From IMG/VR virus record IMGVR_UViG_3300020810_001156, positions 124,001-188,000 of that record: a stretch of 64,000 nt of DNA. One strand, written 5' to 3'. Positions 15,992-63,680 of this stretch are shown here, in pieces. How positions within the stretch are numbered: the first letter of the stretch is position 1; each line of letters starts with the position of its first letter. A model generated the notes under the pieces. It did no database searches. It saw only the letters and a list, made by a program, of their open reading frames with translations, and was not told the DNA's origin. Position numbers and translations under genes: made by a program.

Positions 15992-16007
15992 CAAATAGTT
16001 ATATAAA

Positions 16008-18070: not shown

Positions 18071-18081
18071 AGTAATAATGT

Positions 18082-21000
18082 ATGAGCTATAAAGGTATAG
18101 ACCCAAATGGTATAAATCAGATTTCACAATCCTTAGTTTCACTTTATGTGAATGGGGAAAGGCAAATTGATATATCTACTGAAAATGTTGATATAATCAA
18201 TGACCTTAATGTTCAAGGTAGTGTATCTGCATCCATATTTAGTGGTAGTGGTGAGGAATTATTTAACATACCACCAACGGCTCTTACAACCGATGCTCAA
18301 AATCAAATATTTAGTGGTTCCGCAACAGCATCAATTTCACCTAATAAGGGATTTAAAGTAAATGTAGATACATCTATTAGTGGTGCATTAAATGTATCCG
18401 AATCTTTAACTGTTGGTGGAGTAATTAGTGGTGATGGTAGTGGAATTACAAATATTAATGCGGATTCCATTGGTGATATTGATAAATTAAAATCAGGTTC
18501 AGCTGAAGCTGTGATTTCACCAAATTTAGGATTTGAAATTAATGTAGATACTGAAATAAGTGGTACATTAGATATTAGTGGTTCGTTAAGAACAGATGAT
18601 ACTTTAAAAGTAGATAAATCTGCGGATATTGGTACTGATTTAGATGTTGGTAACAATGTAACAATAGGAAATGATTTAACGGTAGCAGGTAAAATTACTT
18701 CTACCGAACTTCATACAACATACTTATCATCTTCAGTAGTTTATGCTACTGGTTCAAACAAATTTGGTGATGGTGCTTCTGATAAGCAAGAGTTCACTGG
18801 TTCGGTTGGTATAAAGGGTGATTTAAGTGTTGATGGTAATATAGATTTTAGTGGAAACTTAACTGCAGATGATTTACCAACAGGTACTTCTTCTGAAGTT
18901 GTAGTTTTCGATACAACAACAGGTACATTCCAAAGAAAGTTTAACGCATCATCTTCTGGTACATCAGGTACCTCTGGTTCATCAGGTTCATCTGGTTCTG
19001 GTGGTACATCTGGTTCTGGTGGTACTTCGGGAACTTCGGGTTCTGGTGGTTCTTCTGGAACAAGCGGAAGTGGTGGTTCATCTGGAACATCTGGTTCTGG
19101 TGGTTCAAGTGGTACAAGCGGAAGTGGAGGTTCTTCTGGTACATCTGGTAGTGGAGGAACATCTGGTAGTGGAGGTTCATCTGGAACATCTGGTTCTGGT
19201 GGAACAAGTGGAACTTCTGGAAGTGGAGGTAGTTCAGGTACATCCGGCTCTGGTGGCTCAAGCGGTACATCAGGTAGTGGTGGTTCATCTGGAACAACTG
19301 GTTCATCAGGTACATCTGGTAGTGGTGGAACAAGTGGAGAAGATGGTACAAGTGGTACGGGAGGTTCTTCTGGTACAGGAGGTTCTTCTGGTACGGGAGG
19401 TTCAGCTGGTACATCGGGTAGTGCTGGTACTTCAGCAACTGCTGGAACGGCTGGTACATCGGGTTCAAGTGGTTCGAGTGGTACAACTGGTTCTGCTGGT
19501 ACATCAGGTTCTGGTGGAACAAGTGGTACATCAGGTAGTGGTGGTTCATCAGGAACTTCAGCATCTTCTGGTACGGGTGGTACATCGGGTAGTGGAGGAA
19601 CAAGTGGAACTTCTGGAAGTGGAGGTTCATCTGGAACAAGTGGTAGTGCAGGTTCAACGGGTTCAGCTGGTTCAAGTGGAACTGGTGGTTCTTCTGGTAG
19701 TGGTGGAAGTTCTGGGACAGCAGGAAGTGGAGGTTCGTCTGGAACAAGTGGTTCTGGTGGTACTTCTGGTACAACAGGTTCATCTGGGACAGGAGGTTCA
19801 GCAGGTACATCTGGAAGTGGGGGAACATCCGGCTCTGGTGGAACAAGTGGTAGTGGAGGTTCATCTGGAACATCAGGTAGTGGTGGTTCGAGTGGTATAA
19901 CTGGAGCAGGTGGTTCAGCTGGTACAAGTGGTAGTGGAGGAACTTCAGGTTCTTCGGGTACATCTGGTGATGATGGTACAAGTGGTAGTGGGGGAACATC
20001 TGGTTCGGGTGGTTCGTCTGGTACTTCAGCATCTTCTGGTACTGGTGGTACAGCTGGTACTTCTGGTAGTGGTGGTTCATCTGGTACAAGCGGTTCGGGT
20101 GGTACATCAGGTACTTCTGCAACCTCTGGTAGTGGTGGTTCTGCTGGTACTTCTGGCAGTGGTGGTTCTTCTGGAACATCTGGTAGTGGTGGTTCATCTG
20201 GTACAAGTGGTGAACAAGGAACTTCAGGTAGTGATGGTACATCTGGTAGTGGAGGAACATCTGGTAGTGGTGGAACTTCGGGCTCTGGTGGTTCAAGTGG
20301 TACAAGCGGTTCGGGTGGTACATCTGCAACTGCTGGTAGTGGGGGTACTTCTGGTAGCGGAGGTAGTTCGGGTACATCTGGTAGTGGAGGTTCTTCGGGA
20401 ACTGCTGGTAGCGGAGGTAGTTCGGGTACATCTGGTAGTGGAGGTTCTTCGGGAACTGCTGGTAGTGGAGGAACTTCGGGTTCTGGGGGTTCATCTGGAA
20501 CAAGCGGAAGTGGAGGAACTTCAGGTTCTGCTGGTTCTTCTGGAACACTTTCTCTAACTGGCAATACTGATAATGGTGTAATTACACTTAATGGTTCAGC
20601 ACCAAATGCAACTGTTGAATCAAATCTTACTTTTGATGGTACAACTCTTAATGTACAAGGTAACTTAACAGTAACAGGTACAACAACAACTGTTAATACT
20701 GAAACCATTAATTTAGCAGATAATATTATACTTCTTAACTCAAATGAGACTGGTACTCCTTCACAAAATGCTGGTATTGAGATTGAAAGAGGAACTGCTT
20801 CTAACAAACAATTTATTTGGAACGAATCTTCTGATAGATGGGTAGCCGATTCAAACTTACAAACTTCTGGTAATTTATATTCAACAGGTGGACAATTATT
20901 CTTAAATGAAACTGCTGGTGCAATAACCAAAATTACTAATGAAAATAATCTATCAATTTATTCAGACCACTTAGTAAACTTCTTAGAGAGTGATGCGAGT

Positions 21001-41840: not shown

Positions 41841-41872
41841 TTTGGATAATTAAAATATTTTTCTTATATTTG
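41841..41872 (+). promoter_or_regulatory. Bacteroidota-type -33/-7 promoter
   Basis: TTTG-N20-TATATTTG, ending 4 nt before ATG 41877. Confidence 0.8.
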
Positions 41873-41876
41873 TTGG

Positions 41877-43160
41877 ATGATTGTAGTAGAGTCTAACAAA
41901 GAGAAGGAAGAATTTATCAAAAGATGGGAATCTGAACCATCTATTGTAGTTCCCATATGGTGTGATTTAGAAAAACACCCGATGAACAATGAACTTGCGT
42001 TTTTGTTCGTTATGATTGGAAAATCCACCTTTATCCTCATATATAATCATATTGATGGGAAATCCCATCATTTAGACCTTTCCAAATCTACACAACCAAA
42101 ATGGGTGTGGAATAAAAAGGGCTTATTACAAAGTGGTACAAATATACAAAATATTTTTGATATATCCAATTATTACTTCTTTGAAAAGAATCAAACTATA
42201 CCCGATGAGGTACAAAATCAACCATTTATATCACATTATACCCGAATGGGTATAAGAGATGGTTTGGGAAAGATAGCACCTTTGATGAAGTGGGGAGAGT
42301 ACTTAAAATCATTTGTTGATAATATAAGTAGTACTATTCCTCCTCCCGATTTATCTCCTAAAAGTTGGATTGATGACACGATGATTCCTCTTTTATCTCA
42401 GATTGAACGATATGGTGTTCGGGTCGATGGGAGAAAATTTTTTGATAGATATCCACAAGCCACTAAACATTTAAACAACAATATCGTATATACCGAATAT
42501 AACCCATATACCATTACATCCCGTCCTTCCAACCGATTTGGGGGAATCAACTTCTCTGCTTTAAATAAAAAGGATGGTACGAGAGAAGTGTTTATTCCCA
42601 AAGATGGGCACATATTCCTACAAATGGATTATGATGCCTATCACCCCCGAATCATCGGTAAGTTGATTGATTACGATTTACCCAATACTTCCGTTCACCA
42701 ATGGTTAGCGGACCAATATGGAGTTCCATACGATGAATCTAAGGGAATCACATTCCAACTCCTTTATGGTGGGATACCCGAAGAGTTCGACTCTATTCCT
42801 TATTATAAGAAGGTTAGAGAGTACATCGATGTAATGTGGAGTAAGGCATCGGAAATGGGTTATGTATCGACTTACAACCGAAATATACCTCTCTCATCGA
42901 TAGAAGATTCAAATCCTCAAAAAGTATTCAACTATTTATTACAAGCAACTGAAACTGAGTTGAATATGAAAACAATCCAAAAAGTGTTGGAGTTTATTCA
43001 ACAAACCGATATTGAGTTGACCTTATATACTTATGATTCATTCTTATTCTCTTATCCATTAGATACTCCTAAAGAACACGCTCTAAAATTGAAACAAATA
43101 GTAGAGAGTAATGGTTTCCCTATAAAAGCTAGTTGGGGAACGGATTACTCAAAACTTTAA
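41877..43160 (+). CDS. reduced family-A polymerase-like protein
   Basis: TSRPSN, motif A DYDAYHPR, motif B KGITFQLLYG, NYLLQATE, motif C YTYDSFLF; only 427 aa. Confidence 0.8.
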   Translation: MIVVESNKEKEEFIKRWESEPSIVVPIWCDLEKHPMNNELAFLFVMIGKSTFILIYNHIDGKSHHLDLSKSTQPKWVWNKKGLLQSGTNIQNIFDISNYYFFEKNQTIPDEVQNQPFISHYTRMGIRDGLGKIAPLMKWGEYLKSFVDNISSTIPPPDLSPKSWIDDTMIPLLSQIERYGVRVDGRKFFDRYPQATKHLNNNIVYTEYNPYTITSRPSNRFGGINFSALNKKDGTREVFIPKDGHIFLQMDYDAYHPRIIGKLIDYDLPNTSVHQWLADQYGVPYDESKGITFQLLYGGIPEEFDSIPYYKKVREYIDVMWSKASEMGYVSTYNRNIPLSSIEDSNPQKVFNYLLQATETELNMKTIQKVLEFIQQTDIELTLYTYDSFLFSYPLDTPKEHALKLKQIVESNGFPIKASWGTDYSKL

Positions 43161-52158: not shown

Positions 52159-52569
52159 ATGGATGTAATTGAGTATCTCCAACATTGTGTCAAAACCGAT
52201 ATAGCACCTTCTCCAATACATGGAATTGGTACATTCGCTTTAAGAGATATTGAAGTTGGTGAATCTCTTTTTGAAGTGTGGAAAGGTGATACTCGAATTT
52301 ATACCATTGAAAGGGATAAATTTGAGGAATTACCCCACTACACTAAAAAATTAATCTTAAAAGGGTATCTTAATAAACCCGAATACCCAGTTTATTGGTT
52401 TAGATTATTTAACGATTGTTATTGGAATTTGGCTAATCCAATAATGCATACAAACACAGCCGAAAAAAATGGTAACTTCGATTCAATCACTAAAAAAGTT
52501 ATCAAGCCAATCAAAGTTGGTGAAGAAATTTTAGGAACCTACAATTTAAACGATACAATATTAAAATGA
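52159..52569 (+). CDS. SET-domain protein (putative lysine methyltransferase)
   Basis: SPIHGIGTFALRDI..GE and I..GEEILGTY motifs; the NHS motif appears degenerate (HTNTA). Confidence 0.8.
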   Translation: MDVIEYLQHCVKTDIAPSPIHGIGTFALRDIEVGESLFEVWKGDTRIYTIERDKFEELPHYTKKLILKGYLNKPEYPVYWFRLFNDCYWNLANPIMHTNTAEKNGNFDSITKKVIKPIKVGEEILGTYNLNDTILK

Positions 52570-52877
52570 CATTTGATGAATTGATTGAAAACATCACCCA
52601 ATGGGCTGATGACAAGGGGATACTTGTTCCTGATAATGCTCCAAAACAATCTATGAAGATTATGGAGGAGTTAGGTGAAACAATGGGAGCAATCCTAAAA
52701 GGAAAAAAGACTGATGAAGTTATCGATGGTATCGGTGATATATTAGTTACAGTTATTATTTTAGCAAAACAATTAGGTTTAGAACCTACCGAATGTTTGG
52801 AATCAGCTTGGAATGAAATCAAAGATAGGAAGGGAAAGACCGTAAATGGTACATTTATCAAAGAAGAAGAACTATGA
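52566..52877 (+). CDS. MazG-like nucleotide pyrophosphohydrolase
   Basis: WADDKGI...Q.MK.MEELGE...DGIGDILVT...AWNEIKDRKG...NGTF.KE. Confidence 0.85.
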   Translation: MTFDELIENITQWADDKGILVPDNAPKQSMKIMEELGETMGAILKGKKTDEVIDGIGDILVTVIILAKQLGLEPTECLESAWNEIKDRKGKTVNGTFIKEEEL

Positions 52878-54154
52878 GTATATTTGTAGATACTACAGCG
52901 GAAGATGTTCACTTCGTAACTAAACGAGGTGGAGAAAAAGAGAGTTTTAAATTAGAAAAAATTCAAAATTCTATCCTAAAGGCAATGGAATCCATTGATA
53001 GGGTAGATGAGGAAGTAGCAGAAAAGGTTGCAAGAACTGTGGAAAGAAGTTTGTTTAAATACGAACACATCACTACTGTAACAGTAGATGAAATTGGTGA
53101 TGTTGTAGAAAACAAACTTATGGATGTTGGATTAAACAATGTAGCAAAAGAATACATTCTATATCGCTCAAAAAACAAACCAAACATCTTTAAGAAAAGA
53201 GTAAATCTTAAACCTTACGAATATCCACAATTAGTGGAGTATGTTGATGCTATTAGACACTCTTATTGGGTTCATACTGAGTTCAACTTCACATCAGATA
53301 TCCAAGACTTTAAAGTACATCTGAGTGAAAAGGAAAGAACCGCAGTAGAAAGAGCTATGTTAGCAATATCCCAAATTGAAATCGCTGTAAAAACCTTTTG
53401 GGGAGATATCTACAAAAAAATGCCAAAACCTGAGATTGGAAATGTTGGAGCAACTTTCGCTGAATCGGAAGTTAGACATGCTGATGCATATTCAAACCTA
53501 ATTCAGGTTTTAGGATTAAACAATGAGTTTGAAAACTTAATGGAAGTACCTGCGATTCGTAGAAGAATCAAATATTTAGAGAAATCTATTAGTGGAGCTC
53601 GTTCTATTGAAAATAGAGATTACTTTGAATCAGTAATACTTTTCTCTATGTTTATTGAGAATGTATCACTATTTTCACAATTCTTAGTGATGTTATCATT
53701 TAACAAACATAAGAATGTATTGAAAGGTATTAGTAACGCTGTTGAAGCAACATCAAAAGAAGAAAACATTCATGCTGAATTTGGATTTGATTTGGTTAAC
53801 ACAATCAAAGCTGAGAATCCTGATTGGTGGACTGATGATTTAGTTGAAGATATTATTGATGCAACTTTAGATGCATACGATGCTGAGGCTGAAATCGTAG
53901 ATTGGATGTTTGAAAAAGGAGATTTAGATTTCCTAACCAAAGAACAAACCTTAGAATTTATTAAAGATAGATTCAACAGGTCATTAAAATCAATTGGTAT
54001 CGATAGTGTTTTCAGTATTGATGAATCTTTATTAGAAACAACTGAGTGGTTTGATGATGAAATCCTTACCACAAAACATACCGATTTCTTTAACAAAAGA
54101 AGTATAAATTATAGTAAAAAACAAAAATCGATTACAGAAGACGATTTATTTTAA
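52874..54154 (+). CDS. nrdB: ribonucleotide reductase beta subunit with N-terminal ATP-cone
   Basis: VTKRGG...F..EKI...I.KA...VE..LM...VAKEYILYR ATP-cone; ferritin-like E..EVRH..Y...EE..H; DFF near C-terminus. Confidence 0.92.
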   Translation: MSIFVDTTAEDVHFVTKRGGEKESFKLEKIQNSILKAMESIDRVDEEVAEKVARTVERSLFKYEHITTVTVDEIGDVVENKLMDVGLNNVAKEYILYRSKNKPNIFKKRVNLKPYEYPQLVEYVDAIRHSYWVHTEFNFTSDIQDFKVHLSEKERTAVERAMLAISQIEIAVKTFWGDIYKKMPKPEIGNVGATFAESEVRHADAYSNLIQVLGLNNEFENLMEVPAIRRRIKYLEKSISGARSIENRDYFESVILFSMFIENVSLFSQFLVMLSFNKHKNVLKGISNAVEATSKEENIHAEFGFDLVNTIKAENPDWWTDDLVEDIIDATLDAYDAEAEIVDWMFEKGDLDFLTKEQTLEFIKDRFNRSLKSIGIDSVFSIDESLLETTEWFDDEILTTKHTDFFNKRSINYSKKQKSITEDDLF

Positions 54155-55898: not shown

Positions 55899-56162
55899 AT
55901 GATAGAAATTAAAAAATTCGAAGCAGATTGGTGTGGTCCTTGTAGGATGTTAAAACCAACATTTGAAAAATTAGAAGAATCATTTGGAAATTCCGTAAAA
56001 TTTTCGTATATTAACGTGGATGAAAACCAAGATGAAGCAGCTAAGTATTCAGTTCGTTCAATTCCAACCGTTGTTATTGAAAAAAACGGAGAATTGGTAG
56101 AAAGATTTACAGGTGCACAATCGGAGTTAGCATATAAGAATGCGCTAAACGAAGTTTTATAA
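55899..56162 (+). CDS. thioredoxin
   Basis: WCGPC active site; SIPT cis-Pro loop. Confidence 0.93.
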   Translation: MIEIKKFEADWCGPCRMLKPTFEKLEESFGNSVKFSYINVDENQDEAAKYSVRSIPTVVIEKNGELVERFTGAQSELAYKNALNEVL

Positions 56163-56165
56163 GGA

Positions 56166-56369
56166 ATGCCAATACTAAGAGGACAGACTCATCCTTCTGC
56201 AAAATTAACGGATGAGCAGGTTATACAAATAAGAAGGTTATGGAAAATGGGACACCGAAATGTAAGAGTGATAGCTCGAAACAATAAGGTATCCCCAGCC
56301 AATATCATTAAGATTGTCAAAAATAAAACTTGGACACACCTAAATGAATTTTGGTCTGGTAGTTTATGA
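56166..56369 (+). CDS. small HTH DNA-binding protein
   Basis: G..HP.AKLT..QV..IR...IA....VS...I..I...KTW.H, resembling the HTH tail of HNH endonucleases but standalone. Confidence 0.7.
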   Translation: MPILRGQTHPSAKLTDEQVIQIRRLWKMGHRNVRVIARNNKVSPANIIKIVKNKTWTHLNEFWSGSL

Positions 56370-57133
56370 AAGAGGAGAAAACATATTGTGATACTTCTAA
56401 ACTTTCCATTCGTCTTATAACCAAATCGGTAGCGAAGGATATCATTGTTAACAACCATTATAGTGGATTGTGGACAAAGGTATCTTACGCAATTGGTTTA
56501 TTTACCTCTGATGTAGAAGAACATCCTTTTTTTGATAATGTAGAAGATAAACTAATTGGAGTAGCTTGTTATGGAGACCCAATTGGTAGAAGTGCTGGAC
56601 AATCAATATCCCCTTTATTGGAAAGAACTGAAGTATTAGAACTAACTCGATTATTCGTATTCGATGGATATGGTTCTAATATAGAGAGTTGGTTCTTAGG
56701 TCAAACTTTTGATTGGTTAAGAGAGAATGTACCACAAATAAAAGCACTTATTTCATATTCAGACCCTAAAGAAGGGCATTGTGGTACAATTTACCAAGCA
56801 ACTAATTGGTTGTATCAAGGTAACAAACTAAGATTCAATGATAGTTGGGATTTCAGATGGGAAGCAGGTGGTGATTGGCACCACGGAAGAACTTCTTATG
56901 TGAAATTTGGAACAAATGACCCCAAAGAAATACAAAAAATGATATCATCTACTTTTTGGATAAAGAAAAATCCAAGAAAACATAGATATGTGTACATTTT
57001 AGCCAAAGGTGGTGAAAGAAGGAAGTTGTTAAACAATATTAAACATCCAACCTTCCCCTATCCTAAAGAAAATGAACAATTTGTGGAAGAAATTCATAGA
57101 ATGGACCCGATAAATTTGGAAATTACAAAATAA
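56366..57133 (+). CDS. Mom-like GNAT DNA-modification enzyme (copy 1)
   Basis: I...HYS, LIGVA.YG.P, VLELTRL, N.ESWFL, LISYSDP..GH.GTIYQATNW.Y.G, KHRYVY. Confidence 0.82.
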   Translation: MKEEKTYCDTSKLSIRLITKSVAKDIIVNNHYSGLWTKVSYAIGLFTSDVEEHPFFDNVEDKLIGVACYGDPIGRSAGQSISPLLERTEVLELTRLFVFDGYGSNIESWFLGQTFDWLRENVPQIKALISYSDPKEGHCGTIYQATNWLYQGNKLRFNDSWDFRWEAGGDWHHGRTSYVKFGTNDPKEIQKMISSTFWIKKNPRKHRYVYILAKGGERRKLLNNIKHPTFPYPKENEQFVEEIHRMDPINLEITK

Positions 57134-57146
57134 TTTAGTATATTTG
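57115..57146 (+). promoter_or_regulatory. Bacteroidota-type promoter
   Basis: TTTG-N20-TATATTTG. Confidence 0.75.
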
Positions 57147-57163
57147 TAAAAATTAGTAGTATT

Positions 57164-57322
57164 ATGACTGAATCAGAAGAAATTGAAGAAATCTTAATGG
57201 AATCATCATCTTATGGATTAAGAATAGAAGTAATGAAAACTGCTTCTGAAATTATGGGAAGTAATCCCAAAATGAGAAAAGTAGATGCATACCAACAAGC
57301 TTTCAACGAATGGGTAAAGTAG
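57164..57322 (+). CDS. small hypothetical protein (52 aa; not in ORF track)
   Basis: MTESEEIEEILMESSSYGLRIEVMKTASEIMGSNPKMRKVDAYQQAFNEWVK; sits 17 nt after the promoter and overlaps the next start. Confidence 0.65.
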   Translation: MTESEEIEEILMESSSYGLRIEVMKTASEIMGSNPKMRKVDAYQQAFNEWVK

Positions 57323-58116
57323 AAGGAAAGAAATATTGTGATGCTAGTAAAGTAAGTATTGCACCAATAGCTAAATCTATCGCTAAAGATATGATTATCA
57401 AAAAGCATTACACTCATGCTTGGACTGCATGTAGGTACGCTTTAGGTATCTATCATCAAATGGATGAAAAAGATATCTTTGGTAATGATAAAAAGTTGGT
57501 AGGAGTAGCTGTATATGGATTCCCAGTAGGAGCAAAAGCATCCACCTCAGTTTGTGAGGGATTAACAAAAGATAACATCTTAGAACTTACTCGATTGTAT
57601 GTTGATGATGGGTATGGTTCAAACATTGAGAGTTGTGCATTAGGTAAAACCTTCCAATGGTTAAAGGATAACGATACCAACATCAAAGTTCTTCTATCTT
57701 ATGCTAATAATGGACAAGGGCACTTAGGTGGGATTTACAAAGCAACCAATTGGATTTATCAGGGATTGAATACTGATATCGCTCTGATGCCAAATTGGGG
57801 TATTTCACTATCTAATGACCCATACGATTGGATTCACTCTCGAACTGTATTCAACAATTGGGGAAGTGGTAACTTAGAACATCTCAAAAAAGAAATCGGA
57901 AAAGAGGGATATAAAGAATTTTGGAGAAGAGAAGAACCTCCAAAACATAGATACATTCAGATTCTTGCTCAAAATAAAAAAGAGAAAAAGGATTTGATGA
58001 AAAGGTTGAAGCATGAGATTCGACCTTATCCAAAAGAGTTGAATGATTATAATACTGAAGTAGTACATCATTTAACCTATCCACCAGAGGAAAGTAACGA
58101 AATAAATTTTTGGTAA
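57310..58116 (+). CDS. Mom-like GNAT DNA-modification enzyme (copy 2)
   Basis: KKHYTH, LVGVAVYG.P, ILELTRL, LLSYA...GH.GGIYKATNW.YQG, KHRYIQ; clear paralogue of 56366..57133. Confidence 0.82.
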   Translation: MGKVEGKKYCDASKVSIAPIAKSIAKDMIIKKHYTHAWTACRYALGIYHQMDEKDIFGNDKKLVGVAVYGFPVGAKASTSVCEGLTKDNILELTRLYVDDGYGSNIESCALGKTFQWLKDNDTNIKVLLSYANNGQGHLGGIYKATNWIYQGLNTDIALMPNWGISLSNDPYDWIHSRTVFNNWGSGNLEHLKKEIGKEGYKEFWRREEPPKHRYIQILAQNKKEKKDLMKRLKHEIRPYPKELNDYNTEVVHHLTYPPEESNEINFW

Positions 58117-58133
58117 AAAAAAGTGAAAAAATA

Positions 58134-58165
58134 TTTGGATAATTAAAAAATTATTCTTATATTAG
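58134..58165 (+). promoter_or_regulatory. Bacteroidota-type promoter (variant -7 element)
   Basis: TTTG-N20-TATATTAG; spacer nearly identical to the 63649 copy. Confidence 0.7.
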
Positions 58166-58222
58166 TATCATAAAATTGAGCGGGGATGTTCCCCAAATGT
58201 TAAAACCCTAAAACAATAAGTT

Positions 58223-59983
58223 ATGGATTTTCCAAAAGTTACTAAAAAACAATTTAAAGAATTGATATCAAATATTAGAGATACCTATTTGGATTGGTGT
58301 GTTCATAATAACGAAACACACTTTGATGGTTGTACCATTACATGGGGAGATTTAAAAATGTATCCCAAAAAATATCAAGGTGAATTGGAAGTTGGTGATA
58401 TACAAAACTCTCAATCAAATAGAGACCCATCTATATTAGATACATCTAAAAAATTACCTAAAAAATTATCTTACGCACTTCGTATTATGGGTGGTAATTC
58501 ATCTTTCAACTTCTTACCATTGGGTATGTTAGATGATACTATCGCTCTACAAGCAGAAGATAGAGGGCATGAGGGTACTATATTGTTCTTTCACTATGAA
58601 AAGTCTTGGTCAAAATCAATATGGAAAAAAGTACAAAGACAATTAGATTCTGAACTACCTGAAGATGATAGAACAGCTAGCACTAAATTGATTGCAGAAA
58701 ATTTAAGTAATAAATTAAAAGATAAAAAAATAACTGAATTATCTTTATCTGAGGTAATACCATCATCGGTATGTAAGAAGCAATCAAATACCAATATTCC
58801 GATTCAAATAAAAGTATATCCAAATCGTGCAATGCATCGTAGAGAAATATTGGGCATCAATAATAGTGAGGATTCTTGGACAACTCACCAAAAGGGAATG
58901 TTATCAGCGGAGATAAAATTAGATGATAAATATGGTGTTGGTAATGATTATATGGATACTATCTATTCACTGGTAGAGGGAGATGAACTATTTCAGGGTG
59001 AAAAAACTATGTTTAGCCGCCATAACAAAGTAGGGGATAAGATGGAACGATTTGAAGAAGAAATCATTATGTTATGGAATAGTTCTAGGAAAACTAGAAC
59101 AGGTGGTATTTTGGATATTTATCGTGGATTTGATTGTTCAGCTGAAAAGAGAAGAATAAAGCAGTATGAGGATTATGTAATAGCTACTAATAAAACTGAT
59201 GCTGAAAATGAAGCTAGTGTTGGTAAAGAATTTCTTAATTGGATATCTGAATGTGTAGATATTAATACATTTGAAAATAACATAGAGCAGGTTATTAATA
59301 AGCATAATGGTTCATCAACTACCAACATCAATGATTTATCTATGACTAAAGTGGATTCTGCACTAATGATAGCTCATTTGATTGATAATTATATAAAATT
59401 ATCATCATCCAATCCAACGAAGGAAACGGTATTAAATGTAACTGGTTATGTGTTACAAATGGCTTCTGATTTAATATTGGAATCAAAAGTACAAAACGCT
59501 TTAATTAAAGCTGGTACTGGTGCCAATGGGAGATATAACAAATTCTATTCAATATTGGAAGAAGAGCTTAAAAAATTACCTTATGAAACTATTAGTGATG
59601 TAAAGAGTACTTTGATTTCTATGGCTAAACAATCATTAGATACCTCACTAAATCCAAATGGTGATATTTCTATGATTGACCGTAATAATGGTTCTAAATC
59701 TGAATTTAAAATAGTAACAATTAATATATCAAATGGTGTTGGGTTTGATAAAGGACATAAAAACTCTGGAAAAGATGGTAAAGATATTTCTAATTTCTTC
59801 CTACAATTTTCAGGTGATAATAGATTTCATTCAAACAAACGAAACTTTATTCCATCGGAATACTCTTTGGAATATCTAAACTCCATTAAACAATTTATGA
59901 ATACGCATGATTTAATGATGGATGATGATTGGCAAGAGGCATATCAAAACACTCGTAAATTTGTTAATAGTGTTTGGAAATAA
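58223..59983 (+). CDS. hypothetical protein with possible C-terminal HNH-like nuclease motif
   Basis: FDKGH...G.....NFFLQ...DNRFHSNK resembles HNH/DUF1524. Confidence 0.45.
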   Translation: MDFPKVTKKQFKELISNIRDTYLDWCVHNNETHFDGCTITWGDLKMYPKKYQGELEVGDIQNSQSNRDPSILDTSKKLPKKLSYALRIMGGNSSFNFLPLGMLDDTIALQAEDRGHEGTILFFHYEKSWSKSIWKKVQRQLDSELPEDDRTASTKLIAENLSNKLKDKKITELSLSEVIPSSVCKKQSNTNIPIQIKVYPNRAMHRREILGINNSEDSWTTHQKGMLSAEIKLDDKYGVGNDYMDTIYSLVEGDELFQGEKTMFSRHNKVGDKMERFEEEIIMLWNSSRKTRTGGILDIYRGFDCSAEKRRIKQYEDYVIATNKTDAENEASVGKEFLNWISECVDINTFENNIEQVINKHNGSSTTNINDLSMTKVDSALMIAHLIDNYIKLSSSNPTKETVLNVTGYVLQMASDLILESKVQNALIKAGTGANGRYNKFYSILEEELKKLPYETISDVKSTLISMAKQSLDTSLNPNGDISMIDRNNGSKSEFKIVTINISNGVGFDKGHKNSGKDGKDISNFFLQFSGDNRFHSNKRNFIPSEYSLEYLNSIKQFMNTHDLMMDDDWQEAYQNTRKFVNSVWK

Positions 59984-59995
59984 TTAAAATAAAAT

Positions 59996-61126
59996 ATGAG
60001 AGTATTAGTAATACCTAATTATACAAATTTTGGACAAGTAAAGGATATCAATAGGGATTCGTTCCTATTGGTATTCAAGTCCTTTTTAGATAACACACAA
60101 ATTGGAAAGGAGTGGGAGTGGGTCTTACCATATCCAGGTGGTGGAATGCACAATCATCCAGGTATTATAAACACTTTCGAATATCCGAATGTAACGATGT
60201 TACAAATGGACCCGATAGATTGTTTTCCAGCTAAGATGAGGGTTGATTATCCTCACAAATTTTTTGAGAAGGTTATTGAGAAATATGAAGGAAAATTTAA
60301 TCTCGTTTGGAGCCATTTACCTGAGTGGACAAATTTATTTAAGATATCAAGAATCTACAATAAATTACAACCTATAATTGGCTACTGCCATTGGAGCGAA
60401 ATACCCGAAAATGGTGCTAGAACGGAAAACTCATTTTGGACAAACATTAGAGGTATTTTACAAATGGAAGTTTGTGGTGTAAACTCTGAATATCAAAAAA
60501 GTGTTATTCTTAAAAACGCAGCTTTAGATTTCCAACCACATATTGTTGAAAAGTTGGATAAGATTATTCAACCTTGGTATTTAGGATGTGATACAGCTAC
60601 TCCTTCAAATGGATATGATGATAAAACAATCGTATTCAATCATAGAGAAGGTGTTTATACTGGTTCTAAATGGTTCTTTGAAACTATGGATGAGTTGTGG
60701 AAAGAAAGGCAGGATTTCAAAGTTTATACTACTTTGAAAGAAATGGGTAAACCTTATACAAAGTATATTGGAGCAGCTGATAGAAAAGTGTACCTAAGTC
60801 AATTATCAAAAGCACATTTTGGTGTTGGTACTTTCCAAGGTTATTCAGCTTGGAGTATGAGTACAACTGATGGATTTTCAGTAGGTGTACCATATTTACT
60901 ACCAAATGGTTTTTGTTATCCTGAAATGGTAGGTGATGATTATCCACTTCTTTATAATGGTAAGAAAGAATTTAAAGAAATGGTAATAAAGTTATTAGAT
61001 GGTGATATTCCAAGACCTGATGTAACTCACCTTGCTCAATCTCTCCTATGGGAATCACAAATTGAGAAATATTGGAATGTTGAGAAAAATTTTATTGGTA
61101 ACCTAAGAAAAGAATTTAACGATTAA
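59996..61126 (+). CDS. GT-B fold glycosyltransferase
   Basis: MRVLVI start; IVFNHR; WSMSTTDG..VGVPYLLP...YPEM donor-binding region. Confidence 0.8.
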   Translation: MRVLVIPNYTNFGQVKDINRDSFLLVFKSFLDNTQIGKEWEWVLPYPGGGMHNHPGIINTFEYPNVTMLQMDPIDCFPAKMRVDYPHKFFEKVIEKYEGKFNLVWSHLPEWTNLFKISRIYNKLQPIIGYCHWSEIPENGARTENSFWTNIRGILQMEVCGVNSEYQKSVILKNAALDFQPHIVEKLDKIIQPWYLGCDTATPSNGYDDKTIVFNHREGVYTGSKWFFETMDELWKERQDFKVYTTLKEMGKPYTKYIGAADRKVYLSQLSKAHFGVGTFQGYSAWSMSTTDGFSVGVPYLLPNGFCYPEMVGDDYPLLYNGKKEFKEMVIKLLDGDIPRPDVTHLAQSLLWESQIEKYWNVEKNFIGNLRKEFND

Positions 61127-63648
61127 TGTACCAAAACTGCTACTACCAAAGAGAAAAGAATCTCGTTCATATTTGGGATGATAAAAAAGGATACTTCAAT
61201 TTTCCTTATACTCGATACGCATACGAAAAGGCTGATAGAGGTGAGTTTACAACTCTTTATGGAGATAAAGTAACCAAAATCTACAAATTCACAAAAGATG
61301 ACCCAAATCTTTTCGAATCAGATGTACCTGAAACTACGAGAGTTTTGGTAGATACTTATACTGATTCGGATTTACCATCAGAAGGACACACTATTCTTAC
61401 TTATGATATTGAGTGTGAGATGGAGAGCGGTTTACCAAATCCAGAAGAAGCAGAGAATGAATTAACTTCAATCGCACTACATGATTCAGTAACCAATCAA
61501 TATTGGGTTTTGGTTATGGATAAAAGTGGTGATATGTTGGAAAGAAAAACTGATAAAGCAATTGTGATTCCATTTAAGCAGGAAGAACAAATGTTATTAA
61601 AGTTTTTAGAGTTATATGAGATGATTAATCCATCGATTGTAACTGGTTGGAATATTGATTACTTCGATACACCAATGTTATACAATCGTATCAAACGATT
61701 GTTGGGTAAAAGAGCCGCAAATCGCTTATCACCTATTGGTGAGTGTTTTTGGTCTCCTTATCGTAAAAGATTCTTTATGGCTGGTGTATCGTACTTAGAT
61801 TACTTAGCATTATACAAAAACTTCACATACTCGGAATTAGATTCTTATAGATTAGATTCCATTTCTATGAGAGAGTTGAATAGAAAAAAGATTGAATATG
61901 ATGGAAACTTAGACCAATTATTCAGAGATGATATTGAGAAGTTTATAGAGTATAACTTAGTGGATGTTGAACTTGTAGTAGAATTAGATAACAAACTTCA
62001 GTTCATTGATACCGCTCGAGGTATTTGTCACGCTGGGCATGTACCTTACGAAGATTTCGTTTATTCTTCAAAGTATTTGGAAGGAGCACTTTTATGTTAC
62101 CTAAAAAGAAAGGGTATTGTTGCACCTAACAAACCAGCTGATAGAAGAGAACGAATGGAAGCTCTTAAAGAGAATAAAGAAGAGAAGTTTATCGGAGCAT
62201 ATGTAAAAGCACCAATTGTTGGTAAATATGATTGGATATATGATTTGGATTTAACTTCCCTATATCCATCTATTATTATGACTATCAATATTTCACCTGA
62301 AACTAAGATGGGTAAAATTGAAGATTGGAGTGCTGAGGATTATGTTAAAGATAAAAGGGATAGTTGGGTTATCAATGGTGATACAATCACACAAGAAAAT
62401 CTAAAAAAGTTTTTTGAAAGAAGTAAGTTTTCAGTTGCATCAAATGGTGTTCTTTATAGAACGGATAAAGTGGGTTGTATTCCTGATATTTTGGACTTGT
62501 GGTTCTCTCAGAGGGTTGAGTTCAAAAACAAAATGAAAGAATATGGAAACAGTGGAGAAAAAGAAAAATACGAATGGTATAAGAAACGTCAGTTGGTTCA
62601 GAAAATTCTACTTAATTCTTTATATGGTGTGCTTGGCCTTCCTGCCTTTAGGTTCTATGATGTTGATAATGCTACCGCTGTTACCACAACGGGACAGACA
62701 GTTATTAAATCAACTGCGGATATGGCTAACATCAAATACAATAAGGAGCTTGGTACTCCTAATGCTGACTCTAATATATACATTGATACTGATTCTGTAT
62801 TTTTCTCAGCAGCTCCACTTTTAGACCATAGGATTCCAAATTGGAAAGATAATGAGCAAGATACTATTGCTGGATTCGTAAATGATATTGCAGGTGAAAT
62901 GCAAGATTATCTAAATGATTTTTATGATATTCTTGCTGAAAAAGTATTCAATGTAGATAAGGATAAACATCGATTTGAGATTAAGAAAGAATATGTTTCT
63001 AAATCAGGTATTTGGATTGCTAAGAAACGATATGCACAATGGATTATTTCCGATAATGGTGTACCTGTTGATAAGTTGGATGTAAAAGGATTAGATGTTG
63101 TTCGTTCATCATATCCAGCAGCATTTAGAAAGTTTATGAGTGAGGTTCTGATTGAAATCCTTAGAGGTGATACTGAAGAACAACTTACGAATAAAGTGTA
63201 TGATTTTAAAAAGAATCTACCAAATATGGATGTGGTGAAGATTGCAAAAGCTGGAGCTGTGAAAAACTTATCAAAGTATATGCCAAAGAAAAAGAATCAA
63301 ACAGCTATGTTCCAATTTCCATCTGGTTGTCCGGCGCATGTTAAAGCAGCAATTGCATATAATCAATTACTAAAACACTTTGGGGTGGAAAATCAATACG
63401 AACCCCTAAAGGATGGTGATAAGATTAAGTGGGTTTATCTAAAACAAAATCCATATGGGTTGGATGGTGTAGCTATGAATGGTTACAATGACCCACCTCA
63501 GATTATGGAACTGATTAACACTTATATCAATCACGATAAAATCTTCGAAAGAGAACTTCTAAAAAAATTAGAAGATTTCTACGGAGCATTAGATTGGGGA
63601 GAAGTTTTATCCTCAACAAAAACAGCTGAGAAATTTTTCTCATTTTAA
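61126..63648 (+). CDS. family B DNA polymerase (gp43-like)
   Basis: YDIE, TGWNIDYFD, YN..D exonuclease motifs; DLTSLYPSII, KILLNSLYG, YIDTDS, KKRY. Confidence 0.97.
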   Translation: MYQNCYYQREKNLVHIWDDKKGYFNFPYTRYAYEKADRGEFTTLYGDKVTKIYKFTKDDPNLFESDVPETTRVLVDTYTDSDLPSEGHTILTYDIECEMESGLPNPEEAENELTSIALHDSVTNQYWVLVMDKSGDMLERKTDKAIVIPFKQEEQMLLKFLELYEMINPSIVTGWNIDYFDTPMLYNRIKRLLGKRAANRLSPIGECFWSPYRKRFFMAGVSYLDYLALYKNFTYSELDSYRLDSISMRELNRKKIEYDGNLDQLFRDDIEKFIEYNLVDVELVVELDNKLQFIDTARGICHAGHVPYEDFVYSSKYLEGALLCYLKRKGIVAPNKPADRRERMEALKENKEEKFIGAYVKAPIVGKYDWIYDLDLTSLYPSIIMTINISPETKMGKIEDWSAEDYVKDKRDSWVINGDTITQENLKKFFERSKFSVASNGVLYRTDKVGCIPDILDLWFSQRVEFKNKMKEYGNSGEKEKYEWYKKRQLVQKILLNSLYGVLGLPAFRFYDVDNATAVTTTGQTVIKSTADMANIKYNKELGTPNADSNIYIDTDSVFFSAAPLLDHRIPNWKDNEQDTIAGFVNDIAGEMQDYLNDFYDILAEKVFNVDKDKHRFEIKKEYVSKSGIWIAKKRYAQWIISDNGVPVDKLDVKGLDVVRSSYPAAFRKFMSEVLIEILRGDTEEQLTNKVYDFKKNLPNMDVVKIAKAGAVKNLSKYMPKKKNQTAMFQFPSGCPAHVKAAIAYNQLLKHFGVENQYEPLKDGDKIKWVYLKQNPYGLDGVAMNGYNDPPQIMELINTYINHDKIFERELLKKLEDFYGALDWGEVLSSTKTAEKFFSF

Positions 63649-63680
63649 TTTGGATAATTAAAAAATTATTCGTATATTTG
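63649..63680 (+). promoter_or_regulatory. Bacteroidota-type promoter
   Basis: TTTG-N20-TATATTTG. Confidence 0.8.

What the first reader, a model, noticed from the sequence alone, without database searches (positions are those of the whole stretch)
56166..61126. Candidate DNA hypermodification locus: two Mom-like GNATs, possible nuclease and glycosyltransferase, joined to PolB
Seen: between RNR/thioredoxin and PolB lie an HTH gene, Mom-like 1, a small ORF, Mom-like 2, a 586-aa HNH-like protein and a GT-B glycosyltransferase. Established: Mu Mom modifies adenine post-replicatively to resist restriction, and T-even phages glucosylate DNA with GT-B enzymes. Inference: this is a multi-step base modification (acyl plus sugar), possibly paired with a nuclease that discriminates self from non-self DNA.
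Basis: partly seen in the sequence, partly recalled or inferred. Interest (0 to 1): 0.75.

Follow-up and report, generated by a model that had tools for sequence, protein, structure and literature searches.

The report
Phage Mom–glycosyltransferase island with swappable nuclease
An uncultured salt-marsh jumbo phage carries, inside its DNA-replication genes, two adenine-modifying Mom enzymes and an orphan glycosyltransferase that flank a slot where related phages swap very different GmrSD-like nuclease genes, which points to an untested, possibly sugar-bearing adenine modification coupled to a restriction-like weapon.

Summary
Between thioredoxin and PolB lie a 67-aa ORF, Mom-like 1, a 52-aa ORF, Mom-like 2, a 586-aa ORF and a 376-aa ORF. 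Both Mom paralogs score far above Pfam's cut-off and keep Mu Mom's H58, Y59, R111, S124 and Y159. The 376-aa protein is a confident GT-B (GT4-like) fold with no sequence family. The 586-aa protein matches GmrSD_N (DUF262) plus HNH proteins by fold only. Every sequence test failed.

New findings: across 80 related viral contigs, Mom-A, Mom-B, GT, PolB, clamp and DruA are conserved. The gene between Mom-B and the GT is a hypervariable single-gene cassette. It falls into at least 18 clusters in three superfamilies, and two of these are GmrSD_N/HNH-like. The slot is sometimes empty and sometimes holds an extra PLOD-type GT-A. The closest relatives (GT 93–97% identical) carry unrelated cassettes.

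The genome has a canonical ThyA and no Tet/JBP or TGT match, so a T-even-style sugar acceptor is unlikely.

The "acyl plus sugar plus nuclease" reading is partly supported. Momylation is well supported. DNA glycosylation and self/non-self nuclease action remain inferences. This is a new variant of a known kind.

The parts
55899..56162 (+). Thioredoxin; conserved left border of the island
   Evidence: PF00085 1.4e-21; precedes the island in most related loci
56166..56369 (+). 67-aa ORF (s67), possibly HTH-like; its stop overlaps the Mom-A start by 4 nt
   Evidence: Partial match to phrog_20467 (E 8e-6); 59-100% identical in the related loci where it was detected; no cysteines, so not a Com-type zinc finger
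56366..57133 (+). Mom-A: Mom-family GNAT, predicted aminoacyl-tRNA-dependent adenine-N6 DNA transferase
   Evidence: PF25680 1e-43, phrog_1384 1.2e-49; Mu residues H58, Y59, R111, S124, D149, Y159 and W181 kept in 60 orthologs; R151 is K or N
57164..57322 (+). 52-aa ORF (s52) overlapping the Mom-B start by 13 nt; unknown function
   Evidence: ORF list; detected in only part of the related loci, 46-100% identical; no family match
57310..58116 (+). Mom-B: second Mom-family GNAT, 44% identical to Mom-A; the Mom paralog that lies directly upstream of the slot and GT wherever the order could be read
   Evidence: PF25680 2.3e-45; H58, Y59, R111, S124 and Y159 invariant in 69 orthologs; D149 is N in a 20-locus clade that includes this genome; R151 is G, F or E
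58135..58162 (+). 28-nt promoter-like element (TTGGAT-N17-TATATT) upstream of the slot gene
   Evidence: 3 copies in the window against 0 expected; 10 copies on the + strand genome-wide, each 8-167 nt upstream of an ORF; belongs to the conserved left flank in relatives
58181..58195 (.). GC-rich hairpin (GGGGA-TGT-TCCCC) between the promoter-like element and the slot gene
   Evidence: Read from the sequence; picked up by the terminator scan on the minus strand; single copy in the window
58223..59983 (+). Slot cassette gene: 586-aa protein with a GmrSD_N (DUF262, ParB/Srx-like) type N-terminal region, a helical middle and an HNH-like C-terminal beta-beta-alpha block; predicted nuclease
   Evidence: AF2 pLDDT 85.7; fold matches; family-invariant motifs N66-R67, A111-H116 (AEDRGH), G511-H512, N524, D532-N533; nucleotide homology to close relatives is lost over about 58117-58228 and regained at 59967-59996; loose ends of co-occurring strains at 58213 and 58225
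59996..61126 (+). Orphan GT-B (GT4-like) glycosyltransferase; its stop overlaps the PolB start codon
   Evidence: AF2 pLDDT 89.3; Foldseek probability 1.0 to GT4 enzymes; 617 metagenomic relatives and 322 IMG/VR loci; no sequence family
61126..63648 (+). Family-B DNA polymerase (T4 gp43-like); right border of the island
   Evidence: PF00136 and PF03104, phrog_262 5.7e-188
63650..63677 (+). Second copy of the 28-nt promoter-like element that matches the pattern exactly, upstream of the sliding-clamp and DruA-like genes
   Evidence: the clamp is identified and the DruA-like gene (G000:188411-189628, outside the window) by PF14236 6.3e-22

Best explanation
This is an accessory DNA-modification and conflict island inserted into the T4-like replisome gene cluster of an uncultured 252.6-kb salt-marsh phage. 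Mom-A and Mom-B are subfunctionalised Mom-family GNATs. By analogy with Mu Mom, they take an aminoacyl group from a host charged tRNA and put it on N6 of adenine in double-stranded phage DNA after replication (inferred from family membership and conserved catalytic residues). The conserved GT-B that follows most likely adds a sugar to that modified base or to phage DNA in some other way. This step is inferred only from conserved linkage and from the optional second GT in relatives. Between Mom-B and the GT lies a cassette slot with its own promoter-like element. In this genome the slot holds a 586-aa GmrSD_N-like/HNH-like protein. I propose it is a restriction-like nuclease that tells the phage's own modified DNA from host or competitor-phage DNA. 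The cassette is exchanged between phage lineages and diversifies quickly, as expected for a gene in an arms race. It is not needed for the modification chemistry itself.
For: Mom identity: with the mechanism taken from PMC13219725. GT-B fold. Conserved order s67-MomA-MomB-[slot]-GT-PolB-clamp-DruA in 80 IMG/VR loci and further metagenome contigs, although PolB identity falls to 51-58%. Co-occurrence counts: Mom near the GT in 57/60 loci, DruA in 62/62. Joint absence of Mom, GT and DruA from Microcystis phage Mel-JY01, which shares the backbone. Slot hypervariability: 18 clusters in 3 superfamilies, 61 of 70 slots holding a large protein, 7 empty. Clean single-ORF replacement against relatives that are 80-89% identical at the nucleotide level. 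Alternative junctions in the same samples. Nuclease assignment: fold matches to GmrSD_N+HNH, BrxU and SspE. The commonest alternative cassette (superfamily 2) shows canonical QR..W, DGQHR and DH..N..N motifs and has GmrSD_N/HNH Atlas neighbours. Sugar link: in 9 of 80 loci a PLOD-type GT-A is inserted directly upstream of the GT-B inside the same variable region. Precedent: a GT4-type tRNA-queuosine mannosyltransferase ranks second among reviewed structures. Prior prediction of Mom coupled to endonucleases and of multiple Mom paralogs in jumbo phages: PMC7824862.
Against: No chemical data exist for this phage. No long-read runs were listed among the public runs that hold it. The 586-aa family has no sequence-level link to GmrSD_N or HNH: Pfam, PADLOC, NCBIfam, PDB sequence search, hhalign against superfamily 2 and a profile search of 1.84 billion proteins all failed. 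Structural scores are moderate (VIA Z 4.2-4.8, TM 0.46-0.58). The HNH-type His is replaced by Q, R or K in some superfamily-1 clusters. Mu's essential R151 is not conserved in either paralog, and Mom-B here has N at D149. A GT homolog lies in a glycan cluster without Mom, and this phage has a large glycan-biosynthesis cluster downstream, so the GT may not act on DNA. Much of the synteny is within one phage lineage and sits among core replisome genes, so part of it may be inherited order rather than functional coupling.
Confidence: 0.5

Rival explanations
1. Mom-A and Mom-B modify DNA, but the GT-B has nothing to do with DNA. It is one more member of the phage's large glycosylation repertoire, acting on a host envelope glycan, a virion protein or a small molecule, and it lies next to Mom and PolB only through inherited gene order.
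For: A 46%-identical GT homolog sits among sulfotransferase, GlcNAc-transferase and other GT genes with no Mom within 8 kb. This genome has GT4, GT2 (two), UDP-GlcNAc 2-epimerase, DegT, GNAT and sulfotransferase genes 5-15 kb downstream. The nearest structures are GT4 enzymes for small molecules, lipids and glycans, and T4 AGT/BGT are not among the top matches. No hydroxylated pyrimidine acceptor can be made. Jumbo-phage GT clusters have been interpreted as surface-polysaccharide modifiers (PMC7824862).
Against: The GT is separated from the glycan cluster by PolB, the clamp, DruA, the clamp loader and a nuclease. Its stop overlaps the PolB start. It stays next to Mom-B and the slot in 57/60 loci and near DruA in 62/62 while surrounding genes change. 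It is absent together with Mom and DruA from Mel-JY01, which keeps its own downstream GT genes.
Confidence: 0.3
2. The 586-aa gene is a selfish mobile endonuclease cassette, behaving like a freestanding homing endonuclease, that has colonised a hyperplastic intergenic site. It plays no part in modification or self/non-self discrimination.
For: Patchy presence, replacement by unrelated genes in relatives whose GT is 93-97% identical, and empty sites. Precise single-ORF boundaries. Its own promoter-like element and hairpin, reminiscent of the promoter-stem-loop cassettes of T4-type phages (the comparison is from my own knowledge). A genuine GIY-YIG/NUMOD3 homing endonuclease occupies the same region in L063 and L059.
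Against: 61 of 70 slots hold a large protein of 346-676 aa, and at least 59 of these belong to the two GmrSD_N/HNH-like superfamilies. That is much higher occupancy than sporadic homing genes usually show. The proteins carry a ParB/Srx-like NTPase-type domain rather than homing-endonuclease DNA-binding modules. In the 50% clade the 586-aa family has diverged in step with its flanks (58% against 51-58%), which suggests long-term retention.
Confidence: 0.15
3. The slot protein is not a nuclease. It is a ParB/DndB/DpdB-like NTPase accessory factor that loads or targets the Mom and GT enzymes on DNA, and its variability reflects different target-sequence preferences.
For: Only the N-terminal ParB/Srx-like motifs are universal in superfamily 1, and the HNH His is lost in some clusters. 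DndB-family clusters are among the fold matches. A large, mostly viral cluster fuses DruA to ParB_N, which shows a recurring pairing of ParB-type domains with DruA, a family that may be Mom-related.
Against: The slot is empty in 7 loci that keep Mom-A, Mom-B and the GT. The window's own subfamily keeps G511-H512, N524 and D532-N533 invariant across 18 sequences down to 37% identity. Superfamily 2 has a canonical HNH motif.
Confidence: 0.1
4. A T-even- or RB69-type system: the GT glycosylates 5-hydroxymethyl- or 5-hydroxy-pyrimidines that were incorporated during replication.
For: GT-B enzymes do this in T-even phages, and a phage GT of the arabinosyl-5hoC pathway (9ir0, phage HY126) is among the structural matches (PMC13326640).
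Against: The genome's single thymidylate-synthase homolog passes the ThyA equivalog cut-off and keeps L143, C146, D169 and N177, the residues that are changed in hmC, hmU and hoC synthases (criteria from PMC13326640). No ThyX, Tet/JBP or TGT match was found. The Tet/JBP search had no positive control, so its negative result is weaker.
Confidence: 0.03

Closest known systems
Bacteriophage Mu Mom (Gly-tRNA(Gly)-dependent adenine-N6 carbamoylmethylation; PMC13219725, PMC7261163)
   Same: Same Pfam family, well above the cut-off. H58, Y59, R111, S124, Y159 and W181 are conserved. Each Mom gene is preceded by a small ORF that overlaps its start, as com overlaps mom in Mu.
   Different: There are two (elsewhere three) divergent paralogs instead of one. 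Mu's essential R151 is K/N in Mom-A and G/F/E in Mom-B. Mu's dimer residue W48 is S, N, D or A. Mom-B has D149N in this clade. The small upstream ORFs have no cysteines, so they are not Com zinc fingers. The genes sit in the replication module of a lytic T4-like jumbo phage, not at the end of a transposable phage genome. They are linked to a GT.
Predicted momylation-restriction systems of jumbo phages (Iyer, Anantharaman, Krishnan, Burroughs and Aravind 2021, PMC7824862)
   Same: Multiple Mom paralogs in one jumbo phage, and Mom coupled to an endonuclease that is predicted to attack host or superinfecting-phage DNA.
   Different: There the nuclease is a restriction-endonuclease-fold domain fused to Mom. 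Here it is a separate GmrSD_N/HNH-like gene in an exchangeable cassette slot, and a conserved GT-B (with or without a GT-A) belongs to the island.
GmrSD-family Type IV restriction enzymes and relatives (GmrSD, BrxU 7p9k, SspE 6jiv; DUF262 plus DUF1524 or HNH)
   Same: The overall predicted architecture is the same: a ParB/Srx-like N-terminal domain, a helical middle and a C-terminal His-Me/HNH-like block. These enzymes discriminate DNA by its modification state, including glycosylated bases (established knowledge).
   Different: No sequence-level membership could be shown. The motifs are altered (NS..NR for QR..W, [KE]DRGH for DGQQR/DGQHR). The gene is encoded by a lytic phage next to its own modification genes. 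Its substrate preference is unknown.
T-even and RB69-type DNA glycosylation (hmC or hoC plus GT-B or other GTs; PMC13326640, PMC6024577)
   Same: A phage GT-B next to replication and nucleotide-metabolism genes, and a variable number of GTs between relatives.
   Different: There is no hydroxymethylase or hydroxylase homolog, and ThyA is canonical. Any DNA acceptor must arise after replication, presumably by Mom.
tRNA-queuosine alpha-mannosyltransferase (GT4-type GT-B acting on a hypermodified base)
   Same: A GT4-like GT-B fold that aligns over nearly the whole length (TM 0.67 on both sides). It shows that this fold can glycosylate a hypermodified base within a nucleic acid.
   Different: 13% identity. 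The match is no better than to many unrelated GT4 enzymes. Its substrate is RNA.
Hyperplastic regions and promoter-stem-loop (PeSL) cassettes of T4-type phages (from my own knowledge; not checked in a paper here)
   Same: A single-gene cassette between conserved genes, preceded by a repeated promoter-like element and a hairpin, and swapped among relatives.
   Different: No matching repeat was found at the right border of the cassette; the next copy is after PolB. The cargo is nearly always of one functional type rather than miscellaneous.

Membership tests
Mom family (PF25680) | Profile HMM score above the curated cut-off | tested here: met
   149.9 and 155.2 bits against a 27.1-bit cut-off; phrog_1384 at 1e-49 and 1e-46
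Mom family (PF25680) | Residues shown to matter in Mu Mom: H58, Y59, R111, S124, Y159 | tested here: met
   R111, S124 and Y159 are invariant, and H58/Y59 are invariant apart from one gapped Mom-A sequence, in 60 Mom-A, 69 Mom-B and 2 Mom-C sequences aligned to Mu Mom
Mom family (PF25680) | Mu D149 and the essential R151 | tested here: not met
   R151 is never Arg (K/N in Mom-A, G/F/E in Mom-B). D149 is kept in Mom-A but is N in the window's Mom-B and in 19 other loci. An invariant His stands at Mu position 154.
Mom family (PF25680) | HTH-like insertion (Mu residues about 175-209) required for activity | tested here: met
   The region aligns. W181, H183 and T186 are conserved in Mom-A and Mom-B. 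Mom-C has R at position 181.
Mom family (PF25680) | Uses Gly-tRNA(Gly) to make N6-carbamoylmethyl-adenine in dsDNA | not testable with these tools
   Needs biochemistry. The phage encodes no tRNA, so host tRNAs would be the donors.
GmrSD-family / DUF262-HNH nucleases | Sequence match to GmrSD_N (PF03235) and to HNH or DUF1524 models | tested here: not met
   No match in Pfam even at E<5, nor in PADLOC, NCBIfam or a six-frame PF03235 search of the genome. hhalign to the canonical superfamily 2 is not significant. Distant profile hits carry no such domains.
GmrSD-family / DUF262-HNH nucleases | Fold and domain order: ParB/Srx-like N-domain, helical middle, C-terminal beta-beta-alpha nuclease | tested here: met
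   AFDB clusters: DUF262, GmrSD_N, HNH and DGQHR proteins, probability about 1.0, E from 4e-5, spanning residues 31-582. ESM Atlas: GmrSD_N+HNH clusters, 360 residues aligned, TM 0.46/0.58. BrxU Z 4.8 and SspE Z 4.2. The scores are moderate.
GmrSD-family / DUF262-HNH nucleases | Catalytic motifs: QR..W and DGQQR/DGQHR in the N-domain; H...N...N/H in the nuclease | tested here: inconclusive
   The family has invariant N66-R67, A111-H116 (AEDRGH), G511-H512, N524 and D532-N533 in matching order. Their equivalence to the canonical motifs was not checked by superposition. The His is lost in some sister clusters.
GmrSD-family / DUF262-HNH nucleases | Modification-dependent DNA cleavage | not testable with these tools
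   Needs enzyme assays
GT-B glycosyltransferases (GT4-like) | Two Rossmann-like domains with the GT-B topology | tested here: met
   pLDDT 89.3, pTM 0.87. Foldseek probability 1.0 with TM up to 0.75 to MshA and other GT4 enzymes over the full length.
GT-B glycosyltransferases (GT4-like) | Sequence membership (Glycos_transf_1 or GT4 models; EX7E motif) | tested here: not met
   No Pfam, PHROG, NCBIfam or PDB sequence match. No obvious EX7E motif in the conserved C-terminal block C307-Y320 (by eye).
T-even / RB69-type glycosylated pyrimidine systems | A thymidylate-synthase homolog with N177D plus L143D/E (hmC) or D169N (hoC), or a Tet/JBP dioxygenase | tested here: not met
   The single homolog is a ThyA equivalog (334.9 bits against a 327-bit cut-off) with L143, C146, D169 and N177 kept. 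No Tet_JBP hit (search without a positive control).
Freestanding homing endonucleases of T4-type phages | Small GIY-YIG or HNH enzyme with NUMOD-type DNA-binding modules and sporadic distribution | tested here: not met
   586 aa with no NUMOD or GIY-YIG match. The slot holds a large protein in 61 of 70 loci. A true GIY-YIG/NUMOD3 gene occurs next to the slot protein in L063 and L059.

The most novel reading that the evidence does not exclude
The island makes a previously unknown DNA base: an amino-acid-derived N6-adenine adduct installed by Mom-A/Mom-B and then glycosylated by the GT-B, and extended by the optional GT-A in some relatives. One route would be N-glycosylation of the Asn-like carboxamide of N6-carbamoylmethyladenine. 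Another would be O-glycosylation of a hydroxyl, if one paralog uses Ser- or Thr-tRNA. The exchangeable GmrSD_N/HNH cassettes would then be phage-borne, modification-sensing nucleases matched to that mark and used against host DNA or rival phages.
Probability: 0.22. Interest if true: 0.9.

Novelty: new variant of a known kind. Interest (0 to 1): 0.66.

Why it matters
All known glycosylated phage DNA bases are pyrimidines whose hydroxyl handle is made at the nucleotide level by thymidylate-synthase homologs or by Tet-type oxidation. Mom was only recently shown to use charged tRNA to build an adenine hypermodification. This locus links subfunctionalised Mom paralogs to an orphan GT-B, and in some relatives to a second GT, in a genome that cannot make the usual sugar acceptors. 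That yields a concrete, cheap-to-test prediction of a sugar-bearing adenine derivative. Separately, the single-gene slot with at least 18 interchangeable GmrSD_N/HNH-like cassettes, flanked by genes up to 97% identical, is a natural library of divergent nucleases. These enzymes may read DNA modification states, which is of interest for phage-phage and phage-host conflict and as a possible source of modification-dependent enzymes. If the GT proves unrelated to DNA, what remains is a well-documented but less surprising case of Mom paralogs plus a hyperplastic nuclease slot.

Tried and rejected
1. Sequence annotation of the 586-aa and 376-aa proteins gave nothing. I tried Pfam, PHROGs, NCBIfam, PADLOC (including all 18 family members at E<5), a PDB profile search, and tblastn against 50,697 phage records.

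2. The sequence bridge from the 586-aa family to canonical GmrSD_N/HNH failed. hhalign of A2 and A6 against superfamily 2 was not significant; the only alignment put the H..N..N blocks in register at probability below 1%. A profile search of 1.84 billion representatives gave 142 clusters, and the distant ones had no informative Pfam domain.

3. DruA-Mom homology: BLASTP and hhalign were negative. Only Atlas leads remain: 12% of one DUF4338 cluster carries a Mom hit, and a phage GNAT-like family appears at rank 55. Literature searches for DruA returned only Druantia DruE/DruH work and a note that cyanophages encode DruA-like proteins.

4. The T-even/RB69-type acceptor is rejected: ThyA is canonical and there is no ThyX, Tet/JBP or TGT match.

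5. A phage-encoded donor tRNA is rejected: aragorn finds no tRNA genes.

6. Direct evidence of modification from reads was not possible. Only short-read salt-marsh metagenomes and metatranscriptomes, kept as contigs, hold the phage.

7. A cultured handle was not found. The closest Mom (Polaribacter phage P12002L, 44%) has no GT. The closest PolB (Microcystis phage Mel-JY01, 52%) lacks the whole island.

8. Com-like regulation is rejected for the 67-aa ORF, which has no cysteines.

Full report
**Context.** The window is bases 124001-188000 of a 252,603-bp IMG/VR virus record that CheckV rates as complete. It has about 34% G+C and nearly all genes lie on one strand. Public runs that hold it are salt-marsh metagenomes and metatranscriptomes. 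The region is a T4-like replication module. Upstream are a gp32-like SSB, RecA/UvsX, a flap endonuclease, a DnaB-like helicase, a SET-domain protein, MazG, RNR small and large subunits and thioredoxin. Downstream are PolB, a gp45-like sliding clamp, a DruA-family protein, the clamp loader and a PD-(D/E)XK nuclease. The closest cultured relative by PolB is Microcystis phage Mel-JY01, at 52% identity.

**Observation.**
- Both Mom-like proteins score about 150 bits against Pfam's Mom model, whose cut-off is 27.1 bits, and they are 44% identical to each other.
- The 376-aa protein has no sequence family. It folds with pLDDT 89.3 into a GT-B that matches MshA, BshA, PimB', SenB and a phage GT at Foldseek probability 1.0.
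- The 586-aa protein also has no sequence family. Its model (pLDDT 85.7) matches DUF262/GmrSD_N/HNH/DGQHR proteins in AFDB clusters over residues 31-582, with probability about 1.0 and E from 4e-5. It matches GmrSD_N+HNH clusters of the ESM Atlas with 360 residues aligned and TM 0.46/0.58. It matches BrxU and SspE more weakly in the PDB.
- Its 18-member family keeps N66-R67, A111-H116 (AEDRGH), G511-H512, N524 and D532-N533 invariant down to 37% identity.
- The 'HTH' label for the 67-aa ORF rests on a single partial PHROG match.
- Contigs from three metatranscriptome samples match all these genes exactly. DNA carry-over in those libraries cannot be excluded.

**Mom paralogs.** Silva et al. 2026 (PMC13219725) showed four things about Mu Mom:
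- It transfers glycine from Gly-tRNA(Gly) to N6 of adenine in dsDNA, and the adduct then rearranges on the base to N6-carbamoylmethyladenine.
- It acts as a dimer.
- R111, S124 and R151 are essential.
- H58, Y59, D149, Y159, W48 and W181 are important.

I aligned the real Mu Mom with the paralogs and then with 60 Mom-A, 69 Mom-B and 2 Mom-C sequences from related loci.
- H58, Y59, R111, S124 and Y159 are invariant, apart from one gapped Mom-A sequence at H58/Y59. W181 is kept in Mom-A and nearly always in Mom-B.
- R151 is never Arg. It is K or N in Mom-A and G, F or E in Mom-B.
- W48 is not kept.
- D149 is N in a 20-locus Mom-B clade that includes this genome.

These are systematic differences between two conserved orthologous groups, not decay. 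They suggest subfunctionalisation: a different sequence context, a different aminoacyl-tRNA, or a heterodimer. The phage encodes no tRNA. Each Mom start codon is overlapped by a small upstream ORF, which recalls com-mom in Mu. These small ORFs lack cysteines.

**Synteny.** Lookups of distant homologs on metagenome contigs and 80 IMG/VR loci found with the GT profile show the order s67-MomA-(s52)-MomB-[slot]-GT-PolB-clamp-DruA. In the clade whose GT is about 50% identical, the order is GT-DruA-PolB-clamp. Some relatives have a third, short Mom-C. Among loci with enough flank, a Mom gene lies within 5 kb upstream of the GT in 57 of 60. DruA lies within 6 kb downstream in 62 of 62, and PolB in 59 of 62. 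One exception has the Mom pair 13 kb away on the same contig. Mel-JY01 keeps the thioredoxin-PolB-clamp-clamp loader-PD-(D/E)XK-GT backbone, but Mom, DruA and the GT homolog are all absent. The three gene families therefore behave as one accessory set. Part of the conserved order must still reflect the core replisome cluster they sit in.

**The slot.** The gene between Mom-B and the GT is hypervariable.
- In the 70 loci where both flanks are present, the gap holds a superfamily-1 protein of 586-676 aa in 37 (the window's type). It holds a superfamily-2 protein of about 502-562 aa in 22, a 398-aa protein in 2, and only small ORFs in 2. It is empty (7-52 bp) in 7.
- At 60% identity there are 18 clusters.
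- Relatives whose GT is 93-97% identical and whose Mom-B is 92-94% identical carry 659-aa, 506-aa or 676-aa proteins with little or no detectable similarity to the window's protein. The best case is 31% over 186 residues; the other two give no BLAST hit. The window's family is found at 58% identity in the clade whose GT is only about 51% identical.
- Against close relatives, nucleotide homology of 80-89% ends at about 58117-58228 and resumes at 59967-59996. The swapped segment is therefore just the ORF.
- Metatranscriptome contigs from the same marsh break away at 58213 and 58225 into other sequence, as expected if strains with other cassettes co-occur.
- Superfamily 2 shows canonical QR..W, NIDGQHR and GDH..N..N motifs, and its Atlas neighbours are GmrSD_N+HNH.
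- Across superfamily 1 only the N-terminal motifs (NS..NR, [KE]DRG, N..N.W) are universal. The HNH-type His is kept in the window's subfamily but is Q, R or K in some clusters.
- I could not show sequence homology between superfamilies 1 and 2, nor between superfamily 1 and any Pfam family through distant relatives. The family is small but very diverse, with 142 clusters at 50% identity among 1.84 billion proteins.

**Regulation.** A 28-nt element (TTGGAT-N17-TATATT) lies 61 nt upstream of the slot gene and is followed by a GGGGATGTTCCCC hairpin. A second copy that matches the pattern exactly precedes the clamp-DruA genes. There are three copies in the window against zero expected, and ten on the coding strand genome-wide, each 8-167 nt upstream of an ORF. 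The element belongs to the conserved left flank in relatives. The cassette is thus plugged in behind a resident promoter-like site. This resembles the promoter-stem-loop cassettes of T4-type hyperplastic regions, a comparison I make from my own knowledge and did not check in a paper.

**Sugar.** The genome cannot make the usual sugar acceptors.
- Its only thymidylate-synthase homolog passes the ThyA equivalog cut-off. It keeps L143, C146, D169 and N177, the positions changed in hmC, hmU and hoC synthases according to PMC13326640.
- There is no ThyX, Tet/JBP or TGT match. The Tet/JBP search had no positive control.

Points in favour of a DNA-linked sugar step:
- The GT is tightly linked to Mom-B and DruA, as counted above.
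- In 9 of 80 loci a PLOD-type GT-A (PF25342, E down to 1e-29) with a ~100-aa partner is inserted directly upstream of the GT-B, inside the variable region. The variable region is therefore built from nucleases and glycosyltransferases.
- A GT4-type enzyme that glycosylates a hypermodified base, tRNA-queuosine mannosyltransferase, ranks second among reviewed structures.

Points against:
- A 46%-identical homolog lies in a glycan cluster with no Mom nearby.
- This phage has a large glycan-biosynthesis cluster 5-15 kb downstream.
- T4's DNA glucosyltransferases are not among the best matches.
- No literature links momylation with glycosylation.

As a chemical inference only, the carbamoylmethyl group of the Mom product is an Asn-like carboxamide. 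A Ser- or Thr-derived adduct would offer a hydroxyl.

**DruA.** The DruA-family protein (PF14236, 6.3e-22) lies between the clamp and the clamp loader and always accompanies the GT. Atlas data give leads that DruA is related to Mom-type GNATs and is often fused to ParB_N in viruses. Direct comparisons were negative, and no function is published in the papers I could search.

**Prior art and verdict.** Iyer et al. 2021 (PMC7824862) had already predicted multiple Mom paralogs in jumbo phages and Mom domains fused to restriction-type endonucleases aimed at host or superinfecting-phage DNA. New here are four things:
- the conserved Mom-A/Mom-B pair linked to an orphan GT-B and DruA inside a T4-like replisome cluster;
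- the absence of any pyrimidine-hydroxylation route;
- the optional second GT;
- the cassette slot filled with highly divergent GmrSD_N/HNH-like genes.

I rate momylation of phage DNA as likely (about 0.8). I put a restriction-like or conflict role for the slot protein at about 0.55 and DNA glycosylation by the GT at about 0.35-0.4. For the combined model as stated my confidence is 0.5. This is a new variant of a known kind, with a testable chance of revealing a new kind of DNA base.

Noticed in passing
G000:188411-189628 (L009:812-2029), just beyond the window's end: A DruA-family (Druantia type I, DUF4338) protein lies between the sliding-clamp and clamp-loader genes and accompanies the GT in 62 of 62 loci. 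Atlas neighbours include a large, mostly viral DruA+ParB_N fusion cluster and a DUF4338 cluster in which 12% of members also hit the Mom model.
   Followed up: partly
L017:7312-8001, L074:7256-8032, L036:7273-8001 and 6 other loci: A PLOD-type GT-A glycosyltransferase (PF25342) with a ~100-aa partner ORF is inserted directly upstream of the GT-B in 9 of 80 related loci, in two forms about 30% identical to each other. It is absent from this genome.
   Followed up: partly
L063:4625-5554 and L059:1075-1965: A genuine GIY-YIG/NUMOD3 homing endonuclease sits in the same variable region, beside the large slot protein.
   Followed up: no
window 41842-41869, 58135-58162, 63650-63677; 10 copies genome-wide: A 28-nt promoter-like element (TTGGATAATTAAAAAATTATTCNTATAT and variants) always lies 8-167 nt upstream of an ORF and defines a small putative regulon. 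That regulon includes the slot gene, the clamp-DruA pair and the gene at 41877.
   Followed up: partly
window 41877-43160: A 427-aa ORF has only a sub-threshold match to the C-terminal part of family-A DNA polymerase (30.8 bits against a 34.3-bit cut-off), in a phage that already has a PolB. It is preceded by the same promoter-like element.
   Followed up: no
window 52159-52569 and 52566-52877: A SET-domain protein (PF00856, 9.6e-5) and a MazG-like pyrophosphohydrolase lie between the DnaB-like helicase and the RNR genes.
   Followed up: no
window 52874-54154: The RNR small subunit carries an N-terminal ATP-cone domain (PF03477, 2.2e-19), which is usually found on the large subunit.
   Followed up: no
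G000:192536-203215 (L009:4937-15616): A large glycan-biosynthesis cluster lies downstream of the replisome genes. It includes a GT4 with a weak 'GT4-conflict' match, a further GT-like protein, two GT2 enzymes, a UDP-GlcNAc 2-epimerase, a GNAT, a DegT aminotransferase fragment and a sulfotransferase.
   Followed up: partly
whole genome G000: aragorn finds no tRNA or tmRNA gene in this 252.6-kb jumbo phage.
   Followed up: yes
window 12001-16000 and 18001-20000: G+C rises to 0.43-0.48 against about 0.33 elsewhere in the window. I did not examine this.
   Followed up: no
window 58213 and 58225: Metatranscriptome contigs from two runs match up to the slot gene's start codon and then continue into unrelated sequence. 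This suggests strains with other cassettes co-occur in the same marsh samples.
   Followed up: partly
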